NCBI GenBank assembly: GCA_037379345.1
Contig: CM074522.1
Location: forward strand, 21,886,001-21,950,000
Direction: 5' to 3'
Length of the DNA stretch: 64,000 nucleotides
Source: Perna viridis
Taxonomy: Eukaryota
The notes beneath the pieces are model-generated. The model searched no databases. It saw only the letters and a program-made list of their open reading frames with translations, and was not told where the DNA came from. A program made the position numbers and the translations under genes. Positions 61,714 to 61,900 of the stretch are shown piece by piece (position 1 is the first letter of the stretch; each line of letters opens with the position of its first letter).

Positions 61714-61900
61714 AAAACAGACTAAGGCAGGCGCCGAGGCCATCGATGACGACTTCGTGCAAGGTGATGCCGAGGCATCCCAGACCTACCCTGAGCAGTG
61801 TTCTAACCTTAGAAAGAATGGTTATGTCTGCCTCAAGGACAGGCCTTGTAAAATTGTAGAGATGTCAACATCGTCTCCCGGTAAACATGGCCACGCGAAG
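61714..61900 (+). CDS. eIF5A-2 (divergent paralogue) exon ([62 protein letters not shown])
   Basis: tttacag acceptor and AAG|gtaaaa donor at the same position as in eIF5A-1. Confidence 0.93.

What the first reader, a model, noticed from the sequence alone, without database searches (positions are those of the whole stretch)
61862..61900. Second eIF5A gene with a remodelled hypusine loop ([12 protein letters not shown]) resembling archaeal aIF5A / EF-P
Seen: about 3.2 kb downstream of a canonical eIF5A stop codon lies an intact-looking paralogue whose loop reads [13 protein letters not shown]. The acceptor Lys (human K50) is kept, but the K47 and T48 equivalents are S and P (TCT CCC versus AAG ACT, several nucleotide changes). 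Known: [12 protein letters not shown] is nearly invariant in eukaryotes because DHS, DOHH and the ribosome recognise it; K47 is a regulatory acetylation site; a Pro two residues before the modified Lys (PGK) is typical of archaeal aIF5A and bacterial EF-P. Other conserved spots also differ (CSAL>CSNL, CPSTH>CPASH, GDAG>GDAE). Inference: a specialised elongation factor with different modification kinetics (for example stopping at deoxyhypusine), insensitivity to K47 acetylation, a possible new Ser-Pro kinase site, or a role as DHS/spermidine competitor.
Basis: partly seen in the sequence, partly recalled or inferred. Interest (0 to 1): 0.85.

Follow-up and report, generated by a model that had tools for sequence, protein, structure and literature searches.

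The report
Mussel eIF5A paralogue with altered hypusine loop
Next to its normal eIF5A gene, this mussel-like genome carries a second, transcribed and evolutionarily conserved eIF5A gene in which two otherwise invariant residues beside the hypusine-bearing lysine are replaced, a natural variant of one of the most conserved protein loops in eukaryotes.

Summary
Window 61862-61900 encodes [13 protein letters not shown], against [12 protein letters not shown] in the canonical gene 3.2 kb upstream.

**The gene is real and expressed.**
- Spliced contigs from three independent studies join five GT..AG exons with no mismatch.
- Exon 1 is a new mini-exon carrying the ATG and a basic tail. The last exon lies just beyond the window.
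- The product is 170 aa.

**The duplication is old and constrained.**
- Synonymous sites between the two copies are saturated, with pN 0.23.
- Orthologues in four Mytilus species carry [12 protein letters not shown], the same basic first exon and the same tandem position behind a canonical copy.
- Window and Mytilus variants are 74% identical (dN 0.17).

**How unusual it is.**
- Of 229 fetched eIF5As, 226 have the canonical loop.
- The variant clade also changes S75, T76 and P115.
- Pro48 matches archaeal aIF5A, and Pyrococcus has exactly SSPGKHG. Overall, though, the protein is a typical eukaryotic eIF5A fold.

**Interpretation.** The genome has a single DHS, and it looks canonical. Most likely this is a still-hypusinated, specialised and non-housekeeping eIF5A with altered regulation: no K47 acetylation site and changed DHS and Xpo4 contacts. 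The Ser-Pro kinase idea is not conserved, because Mytilus has Ala there. Modification state and function remain untested.

The scan holds no note of this feature on other DNA.

The parts
52113..57865 (+). Canonical eIF5A gene. Four coding exons at 52113-52286, 54404-54508, 56238-56369 and 57803-57865. Loop is [12 protein letters not shown].
   Evidence: ORFs and splice sites. Pfam PF21485 on exon 1. 82.6% identical to Mytilus canonical eIF5A P0235. Gene-body CpG o/e 0.51.
60973..61057 (+). Variant gene exon 1: 5' UTR, ATG at 61038, then M-R-N-K-G-K plus 2 nt of a split Arg codon (basic N-terminal tail).
   Evidence: RNA-type contigs in runs X1, X4 and X6 join it to exon 2 across a GT..AG intron of 656 nt. 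An in-frame stop lies just upstream of the ATG. Mytilus has the same mini-exon and the same intron phase.
61714..61900 (+). Variant gene exon 2: N-terminal domain with the remodelled hypusine loop [12 protein letters not shown].
   Evidence: Translation. Pfam PF21485 positions 1-41, E 1.4e-22. Spliced contigs with 0 mismatches.
61874..61885 (+). Codons TCT CCC GGT AAA, giving Ser47, Pro48, Gly49 and the acceptor Lys50 (human numbering).
   Evidence: Direct reading. K47 is 100% and T48 is 99.4% conserved in 173 canonical eIF5As, but S/A and P in all 8 variant-clade sequences.
63083..63187 (+). Variant gene exon 3: end of the N-domain, with CPASH in place of CPSTH (S75A, T76S).
   Evidence: Translation. 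Pfam PF21485 positions 42-63. Spliced contigs. Signature positions.
63699..63833 (+). Variant gene exon 4 (OB domain). Exon 5 lies beyond the window, at extended window coordinates 64186-64591+, with the stop at 64249-64251. This corresponds to L008:3686-4091.
   Evidence: Pfam PF01287 positions 10-53 on exon 4 and 54-69 on exon 5. Spliced contigs reach at least 64591. Last exon read.
62589..62811 (.). MITE of about 220 bp in intron 2, with 41-nt terminal inverted repeats and TTAA ends. A second copy lies 3' of the gene at about 65255-65473, beyond the window. It is not part of the coding function.
   Evidence: the repeat finder. Very high k-mer depth in all runs.
50215..64000 (+). First copy of a 16,036-bp unit holding both genes. 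The assembly repeats it in perfect tandem, with the second copy at extended coordinates 66250-82282.
   Evidence: 0 substitutions and 4 homopolymer-length differences between the two copies. Genome-wide, the only four eIF5A loci are these two pairs.

Best explanation
This is a genuine, old, tandem-duplicated eIF5A paralogue specific to the mussel lineage, as far as sampling goes. It has been kept under purifying selection and is transcribed as a five-exon mRNA encoding 170 aa. It keeps the complete eIF5A fold, the acceptor lysine and the G-K-H-G-H-A-K core. It therefore most likely is still deoxyhypusinated or hypusinated by the genome's single, canonical DHS and works at the ribosomal E site like eIF5A. 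What changed is the 'basic tip' and the regulation. Lys47, a positive charge and reported acetylation site, is gone. Thr48 is replaced by Pro; its main chain is held by DHS Asn173, it contacts Xpo4, and its human T48N variant lowers hypusination and ribosome binding. Three more near-invariant residues (S75, T76, P115) are changed. A new first exon adds a disordered Lys/Arg-rich tail. The gene also lacks the CpG depletion typical of housekeeping genes. The inferred result is a specialised, restricted or inducible isoform whose modification efficiency and nucleo-cytoplasmic handling differ from those of the housekeeping copy. Shown: the gene, its splicing, conservation, constraint, fold, and the single DHS. 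Inferred: that it is hypusinated, that it acts on ribosomes, and the regulatory consequences.
For: Splicing and transcription: GT..AG joints at all four introns in contigs of three studies, with 0 mismatches. Complete ORF with upstream in-frame stop and intact last exon. Age and constraint: window canonical vs variant has pS 0.89 (saturated), pN 0.23 and 65% identity. Variant orthologues (window vs Mytilus) are 74.2% identical with dN 0.167 and pS 0.82. Canonical orthologues are 82.6% identical with dN 0.114 and dS about 1.9. Orthologues with [12 protein letters not shown] occur in four Mytilus species. The same tandem order is seen in M. californianus, with the same exon structure and intron phases. 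The clade has 100/100 support on a long stem. 48 of the 54 most conserved eIF5A columns are retained. Both Pfam domains are tiled by the exons. The AF2 model of the Mytilus orthologue has pLDDT 84, TM 0.94 and rmsd 1.4 A to human eIF5A, with residues 1-27 disordered. There is a single DHS locus that keeps E137, N164, N173 and Y176. Pro48-type loops coexist with DHS in archaea: M. jannaschii has K-P and a DHS hit (control list). Literature: T48N reduces hypusination and ribosome binding (PMC7864902). DHS N173 binds the T48 main chain, and N173A abolishes hypusination (PMC10042821). Xpo4 E462/E465 contact T48 (PMC4912631). K47 acetylation and nuclear enrichment are described in PMC8705083. CpG o/e is 0.51 (window) and 0.25 (Mytilus) for the canonical gene, against 0.78 and 0.76 for the variant. 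GC3 is 0.31 and 0.23 against 0.52 and 0.42.
Against: There is no protein-level evidence, so translation, hypusination and ribosome binding of the variant are untested. Human T48N lowers hypusination, and a Pro removes the backbone NH at a residue contacted by DHS N173, so the variant could be a poor DHS substrate. The runs are only guessed to be RNA, although splicing proves a processed transcript. Contig depth cannot give expression level or tissue. CpG o/e is only a proxy for expression breadth. The variant evolves about 1.5 times faster than the canonical copy.
Confidence: 0.6

Rival explanations
1. The variant is a hypusination-impaired or unmodified paralogue with a hypusine-independent role. 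It might act as a nuclear or RNA-binding factor, or as a competitor that titrates DHS, spermidine or ribosomal E sites. In this reading the K47/T48 changes and the basic N-terminal tail serve to keep it unmodified and/or nuclear.
For: T48N lowers hypusination in human eIF5A. DHS N173 contacts the T48 main chain and is essential. The Xpo4 contact residue T48 is lost. A basic NLS-like disordered tail is added. The stem branch is long, 0.4-0.48.
Against: The acceptor Lys and the whole G-K-H-G-H-A-K core are strictly conserved across the clade, which would be unnecessary without modification. Archaeal aIF5As with K-P or S-P loops coexist with DHS. 48 of 54 highly conserved columns are retained.
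Confidence: 0.22
2. The variant is a neofunctionalised structural or non-translational protein, as happened to the fungal eIF5A duplicate Hex1 (Woronin body).
For: Hex1 shows that eIF5A duplicates can take on new roles (hits). The variant changes five near-invariant positions.
Against: The fold match to eIF5A is TM 0.94, against 0.47-0.55 to Hex1. The hypusine core is intact. Identity to canonical eIF5A is still 61-66%.
Confidence: 0.06
3. The variant is a transcribed pseudogene, or an artefact of assembly or sequencing.
For: The whole 16-kb unit is duplicated in the assembly with only homopolymer differences, which shows that this region may hold an assembly artefact.
Against: The reading frame is open, all splice sites are intact and the transcripts are spliced. 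Synonymous sites are saturated while amino-acid divergence is low, both between paralogues and between orthologues. The same gene with the same loop type occurs in Mytilus genomes assembled independently. No read or contig disagrees at the loop codons.
Confidence: 0.02

Closest known systems
Canonical eukaryotic eIF5A (human EIF5A1, yeast TIF51A/HYP2)
   Same: Two-domain fold (PF21485 plus PF01287). Acceptor Lys within G-K-H-G-H-A-K. 61-66% identity. Same intron positions as the neighbouring canonical gene.
   Different: K47 to S/A, T48 to P, S75 to A, T76 to S/H, and P115 to D/E, all at positions that are 92-100% invariant elsewhere. An extra basic N-terminal exon. No CpG depletion.
Regulated second eIF5A copies (vertebrate EIF5A2, yeast TIF51B/ANB1)
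   Same: A second, presumably non-housekeeping copy beside an essential housekeeping one.
   Different: Those pairs are 84-90% identical, have identical hypusine loops and are described as interchangeable (bioRxiv 10.64898/2026.07.17.739231). The mussel pair is 65% identical with a changed loop. It is not orthologous to vertebrate 5A2, which forms a separate clade.
Archaeal aIF5A
   Same: Pro at the position two residues before the modified Lys. Most archaea have S-K-P-G-K-H-G. Pyrococcus horikoshii 1iz6 has exactly S-S-P-G-K-H-G.
   Different: Only 23-28% identity and weaker structural matches. The mussel protein is a derived eukaryotic eIF5A, so the Pro is convergent. Most archaea keep Lys47.
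Sporadic Pro48-type eIF5A copies in other eukaryotes (Penicillium chermesinum R-P; Peltigera and Bisporella K-P; Lithocolla globosa A-P; a crustacean-like marine transcript K-P)
   Same: They replace Thr48 with Pro while keeping the GKHG core.
   Different: They fall in separate parts of the tree, with fungi and nucleariids, or with decapods. They are independent events, and none shares the mussel clade's other signature changes or its N-terminal exon.
Hex1 (Woronin body major protein)
   Same: A lineage-specific eIF5A duplicate.
   Different: Hex1 is only a weak match: TM 0.47-0.55 and 24-25% identity to the variant model, E about 1e-3 to the loop exon. From my own knowledge, not checked here, Hex1 has lost the hypusine site and self-assembles. 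The mussel variant keeps the site and the eIF5A geometry.

Membership tests
eIF5A/aIF5A family | N-terminal IF5A-like (KOW/SH3-like) domain, Pfam PF21485 | tested here: met
   Exon 2 matches profile positions 1-41 (E 1.4e-22). Exon 3 matches positions 42-63 (E 1.5e-08). Both are above the cut-off.
eIF5A/aIF5A family | C-terminal OB-fold domain, Pfam PF01287 | tested here: met
   Exon 4 matches positions 10-53 (E 2.4e-11, above the cut-off). Exon 5 matches positions 54-69, weak on its own. The full domain is found in orthologue P0020 (E 5.5e-23).
eIF5A/aIF5A family | Acceptor lysine in the motif [P/T]-G-K-H-G-x-A-K at the tip of the beta3-beta4 hairpin | tested here: met
   P-G-K-H-G-H-A-K is read directly. 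It is invariant in all 8 clade members. The wording of the signature is from my memory of the PROSITE pattern and was not checked against a tool.
eIF5A/aIF5A family | Two-domain three-dimensional fold | tested here: met
   Tested on the Mytilus orthologue, not on the joined window model: pLDDT 84, TM 0.94 and rmsd 1.4 A to human eIF5A 5dlq_F.
Canonical eukaryotic eIF5A (invariant loop) | The 12-residue loop [12 protein letters not shown] | tested here: not met
   Positions 47 and 48 are S-P here and A-P in Mytilus. 226 of 229 fetched eIF5As have the canonical loop.
Canonical eukaryotic eIF5A (invariant loop) | Lys50 converted to hypusine by DHS and DOHH | not testable with these tools
   Only indirect evidence is available: a single DHS locus with conserved loop-holding residues. 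DOHH was not searched for.
Canonical eukaryotic eIF5A (invariant loop) | Binds the ribosomal E site and relieves polyproline stalls | not testable with these tools
   Inferred only, from retention of 48 of 54 highly conserved columns.
Vertebrate-type eIF5A2 | Orthology to vertebrate EIF5A2 | tested here: not met
   Fish and frog 5A2 form their own supported clade (96/90). The mussel variant clade is separate (100/100). The 'eIF5A-2' name on the M. galloprovincialis entry is only a label.
Archaeal aIF5A | Overall sequence and structure closest to aIF5A | tested here: not met
   Eukaryotic eIF5A chains match at 46-60% identity with E about 1e-18. aIF5A chains match at 23-28% identity with E about 1e-10.

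The most novel reading that the evidence does not exclude
The variant is a second, functionally distinct hypusine-pathway protein. The conserved [S/A]-Pro tip and basic tail would make it escape K47 acetylation and Xpo4 export, and/or stop at deoxyhypusine. It would then act in a compartment or on a set of mRNAs that the housekeeping eIF5A does not serve. If so, it would be the first animal eIF5A paralogue with a genuinely different modification or localisation logic, and a natural experiment on what loop residues 47 and 48 are for.
Probability: 0.2. Interest if true: 0.75.

Novelty: new variant of a known kind. Interest (0 to 1): 0.52.

Why it matters
The hypusine loop is treated as invariant in eukaryotes, and human T48N and P115S cause a neurodevelopmental disorder. 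Here nature has kept changes at K47, T48, S75, T76 and P115 under purifying selection, for long enough to saturate synonymous sites, in a gene that must share one DHS with the canonical substrate. That gives a ready-made pair of substrates, from the same organism and the same enzymes, for three questions. How do DHS, DOHH, Xpo4 and the ribosome read positions 47 and 48? Is K47 acetylation dispensable? Can eIF5A paralogues specialise beyond expression pattern alone? The gene models exist in Mytilus annotations as 'eIF5A-1-like', but none of my searches of the paper library turned up a description of the loop change.

Tried and rejected
1. A word-index search with the variant-specific exon 4 returned only a gene-caller ORF on a DNA contig of the same species. 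It added no new taxa.

2. The exhaustive HMMER search of the 50%-identity library collapses the variant into general eIF5A clusters, so no further clade member was found. It was still useful for surveying loop variation.

3. P0352 is an unnamed transcript with a K-P loop and a variant-like C-terminus. It is only marginally closer to the variant than to canonical eIF5A (143 vs 131 bits), so I left it unresolved.

4. The divergent second eIF5A of Elysia chlorotica (K-V loop) and the fungal and nucleariid Pro48 copies do not join the mussel clade.

5. The position of the duplication among bivalves or molluscs could not be resolved, because the tree backbone is a polytomy.

6. Whether the 16-kb tandem repeat is real could not be decided. 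The only DNA contig near the junction ends 29 nt past it, and no single-copy depth baseline was available.

7. PDB 8put (IF5A-DHS complex) turned out to have a K-T loop, so it is not a structural precedent for Pro48 bound to DHS.

8. The Ser-Pro phosphosite idea was rejected as a clade feature, because Mytilus has Ala.

9. Pseudogene and sequencing-error readings were rejected.

10. The joined (spliced) 170-aa model of the window gene was not sent to any search or fold tool. Searches were done exon by exon, by reference. Full-length queries used the natural Mytilus orthologue ids. Joined exon translations were used only inside local scripts, for alignment, counting and trees.

Full report
**Observation.** Window 61862-61900 reads ATG TCA ACA TCG TCT CCC GGT AAA CAT GGC CAC GCG AAG and is followed by a GT donor, giving [13 protein letters not shown]. 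The canonical gene upstream has AAG ACT where the variant has TCT CCC. The canonical stop codon ends at 57865 and the variant's start codon is at 61038, so the '3.2 kb downstream' is right.

**Gene model and transcription.**
- The window is G000:C12:21886001-21950000, and the variant gene runs off its end, so I fetched the flanking DNA.
- Fifteen small, transcriptome-sized public runs from six studies hold every sampled word of the loop exon.
- I laid three of them, from three studies, plus one DNA-sized run on a 6-kb locus (L008 = window 60501-66500). The three small runs each gave contigs that skip four GT..AG introns and match the genome without a single differing letter in the exons. The DNA-sized run gave unspliced contigs.
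- The exons are 60973-61057, 61714-61900, 63083-63187, 63699-63833 and 64186 to at least 64591.
- The reading frame opens at an ATG at 61038, just after an in-frame stop, and ends at 64249-64251. The product is 170 aa and starts M-R-N-K-G-K-R-K-Q-T-K.
- The runs are only guessed to be RNA, but splicing itself shows a processed transcript.
- Contig depths cannot rank expression, and I had no second read-laying run to compare with the canonical gene.

**Age and constraint.**
- The two window paralogues share their three internal intron positions and are 65.4% identical.
- By Nei-Gojobori counting done exon by exon, pS is 0.89 (saturated) and pN is 0.23.
- The genome holds no other eIF5A loci apart from a second, identical copy of this pair.

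**Orthologues.**
- I searched with the stop-free open frame around exon 2, given by reference and scoring only the exon part. This found Mytilus proteins of 174-176 aa with the loop [12 protein letters not shown], a basic start (MKNKNKGS…) and the same C-terminal motif as the window's variant.
- The cluster holds such proteins from M. galloprovincialis, M. edulis, M. trossulus and M. californianus, next to canonical 155-157-aa copies with STSKTGK. It also holds a 324-aa mis-annotation that fuses the two neighbouring genes.
- In M. californianus the canonical gene lies about 7.4 kb upstream of the variant on the same strand.
- The Mytilus variant has the same five-exon layout, including a mini first exon that ends in the same intron phase.
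- Window and Mytilus variants are 74.2% identical (dN 0.167, pS 0.82). The canonical orthologues are 82.6% identical (dN 0.114, dS about 1.9).
- So the duplication predates the split of these two deeply diverged mussels. Both copies are under strong purifying selection, and the variant evolves about 1.5 times faster.
- In maximum-likelihood trees the variant clade has 100/100 support on a long stem (0.4-0.48 changes per site). The backbone is unresolved, so the duplication cannot be placed more precisely.
- A full-length search with the Mytilus variant found no further members among named oyster, Dreissena, gastropod or cephalopod proteins. This suggests, but does not prove, restriction to the mussel lineage.
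- Earlier follow-ups in this scan also judged the genome to be mussel-like.

**How unusual the loop is.**
- Of 229 eIF5As fetched, 226 have [12 protein letters not shown].
- Among 150 more diverse family representatives, Pro48 appears sporadically: R-P in Penicillium chermesinum, K-P in Peltigera and Bisporella, A-P in the nucleariid Lithocolla, and K-P in a crustacean-like marine transcript. These sit elsewhere in the tree, so Pro48 has arisen several times.
- In archaea the pattern K-P-G-K-H-G-x-A-K is widespread. All 80 loci I translated carry the motif, and the six printed ORFs are aIF5A-like proteins of 127-137 aa.
- Solved aIF5A structures show K-P (M. jannaschii), K-T (Pyrobaculum, and 8put), and in Pyrococcus horikoshii exactly S-S-P-G-K-H-G.
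- The protein as a whole is nonetheless a derived eukaryotic eIF5A. The AlphaFold model of the Mytilus orthologue (pLDDT 84) superposes on human eIF5A at TM 0.94 and rmsd 1.4 A with 58% identity, against 23-28% identity for aIF5A. Its first 27 residues are disordered.
- The window's exons tile both Pfam domains end to end.

**Signature changes and what is known about those positions.** Compared against 173 canonical eIF5As, the eight variant-clade sequences keep 48 of the 54 most conserved columns. They all differ at the following positions:

| Position | Canonical residue (conservation) | Variant clade |
|---|---|---|
| 47 | K (100%) | S/A |
| 48 | T (99.4%) | P |
| 75 | S (99.4%) | A |
| 76 | T (99.4%) | S/H |
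| 115 | P (92.5%) | D/E |

What the literature says about these positions:
- Human T48N reduces hypusination, ribosome association and polyproline-protein synthesis. P115S is also a disease variant (PMC7864902).
- In the human eIF5A-DHS complex, DHS Asn173 binds the main chain of Thr48, and N173A abolishes hypusination (PMC10042821).
- Xpo4 Glu462 and Glu465 contact Thr48 (PMC4912631).
- Acetylation at K47 and nuclear enrichment of acetylated eIF5A are summarised in PMC8705083.
The Ser-Pro kinase-site idea does not hold, because Mytilus has Ala.

**Enzyme side.** The genome has one DHS locus. Its product keeps E137, N164, N173 and Y176, read from an alignment to human DHS. There is no sign of a dedicated second enzyme, so both substrates must share one DHS. 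Pro48-type loops coexist with DHS in archaea: M. jannaschii has a K-P loop and appears in the DHS control list. A proline at this position is therefore not in itself incompatible with deoxyhypusine synthesis.

**Expression-regime proxies.**

| Measure | Canonical (window / Mytilus) | Variant (window / Mytilus) |
|---|---|---|
| Gene-body CpG observed/expected | 0.51 / 0.25 | 0.78 / 0.76 |
| GC3 | 0.31 / 0.23 | 0.52 / 0.42 |

In invertebrates, CpG depletion marks germline-methylated, broadly expressed genes. This is established knowledge, not tested here. The contrast is conserved in both species and suggests a housekeeping copy beside a restricted or inducible one.

**Most likely mechanism.**
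- I favour (0.6) a still-hypusinated E-site factor with altered regulation.
- The intact acceptor core and fold argue for retained chemistry.
- The changed tip, the basic disordered tail and the CpG signature argue for changed handling: modification efficiency, acetylation, nuclear export or import, and expression.
- The main rival (0.22) is a poorly modified or unmodified paralogue with a hypusine-independent or competitive role. It is favoured by the T48N and N173 data and disfavoured by strict conservation of the core.
- A Hex1-like new function (0.06) and a pseudogene or artefact (0.02) are unlikely.
- Known second copies (vertebrate EIF5A2, yeast ANB1) are 84-90% identical to their partners and keep the same loop, so this pair is a different kind of divergence.
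- None of my searches of the paper library turned up a description of it.

**Caveats.**
- The assembly repeats the whole 16,036-bp unit in perfect tandem, with 0 substitutions and only four homopolymer-length differences. This is either an assembly artefact or a very recent duplication, so the locus should be counted as one gene pair until that is resolved.
- Taxon sampling outside Mytilus rests on protein databases only.
- The joined spliced model of the window gene was never submitted to a search or fold tool. Searches were made exon by exon, by reference. Full-length work used the natural Mytilus proteins.

Noticed in passing
window 50215-64000, continuing to extended coordinates 66251 and 66250-82282 (L004-L006): A 16,036-bp unit carrying both eIF5A genes is repeated in perfect tandem. 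The two copies have 0 substitutions and differ only at four homopolymers (T16/T14, T15/T14, G14/G11, T9/T11). This is probably an assembly artefact or a very recent duplication.
   Followed up: partly
window 62589-62811 (intron 2 of the variant) and extended coordinates about 65255-65473: Two direct copies (86-94% identical) of a roughly 220-bp MITE with 41-nt terminal inverted repeats and TTAA ends. Its k-mer depth in public runs is 10^4-10^5. A related fragment seems to lie in intron 3 of the canonical gene near 56600.
   Followed up: partly
P0352 (Logan ERR7439267, locus L133:287-718): An unnamed 143-aa eIF5A-like transcript with the loop [12 protein letters not shown] and a C-terminus resembling the mussel variant. 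It is only marginally closer to the variant than to canonical eIF5A. It may be a distant relative or a case of convergence.
   Followed up: partly
P0284 (Elysia chlorotica, 163 aa): The sea slug has a second, very divergent eIF5A with the loop HSSKVGKHGHAK (Thr48 to Val) besides its canonical copy. It does not group with the mussel variant.
   Followed up: partly
P0290, P0393, P0338, P0356, P0159: Pro48-type loops occur in eIF5A copies of Penicillium chermesinum (R-P), Peltigera and Bisporella (K-P), Lithocolla globosa (A-P) and a crustacean-like marine transcript (K-P). The 'invariant' loop has been changed independently several times.
   Followed up: partly
P0241 (Mytilus galloprovincialis, 324 aa): A database entry that fuses the canonical and variant eIF5A genes into one protein. 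It is a read-through mis-annotation caused by their tandem position, and it also makes the 90% cluster mix both types.
   Followed up: yes
window 60880-60900: A TATATATA stretch lies about 75-90 nt upstream of the 5' ends of the RNA contigs of the variant gene. The true transcription start was not determined.
   Followed up: no
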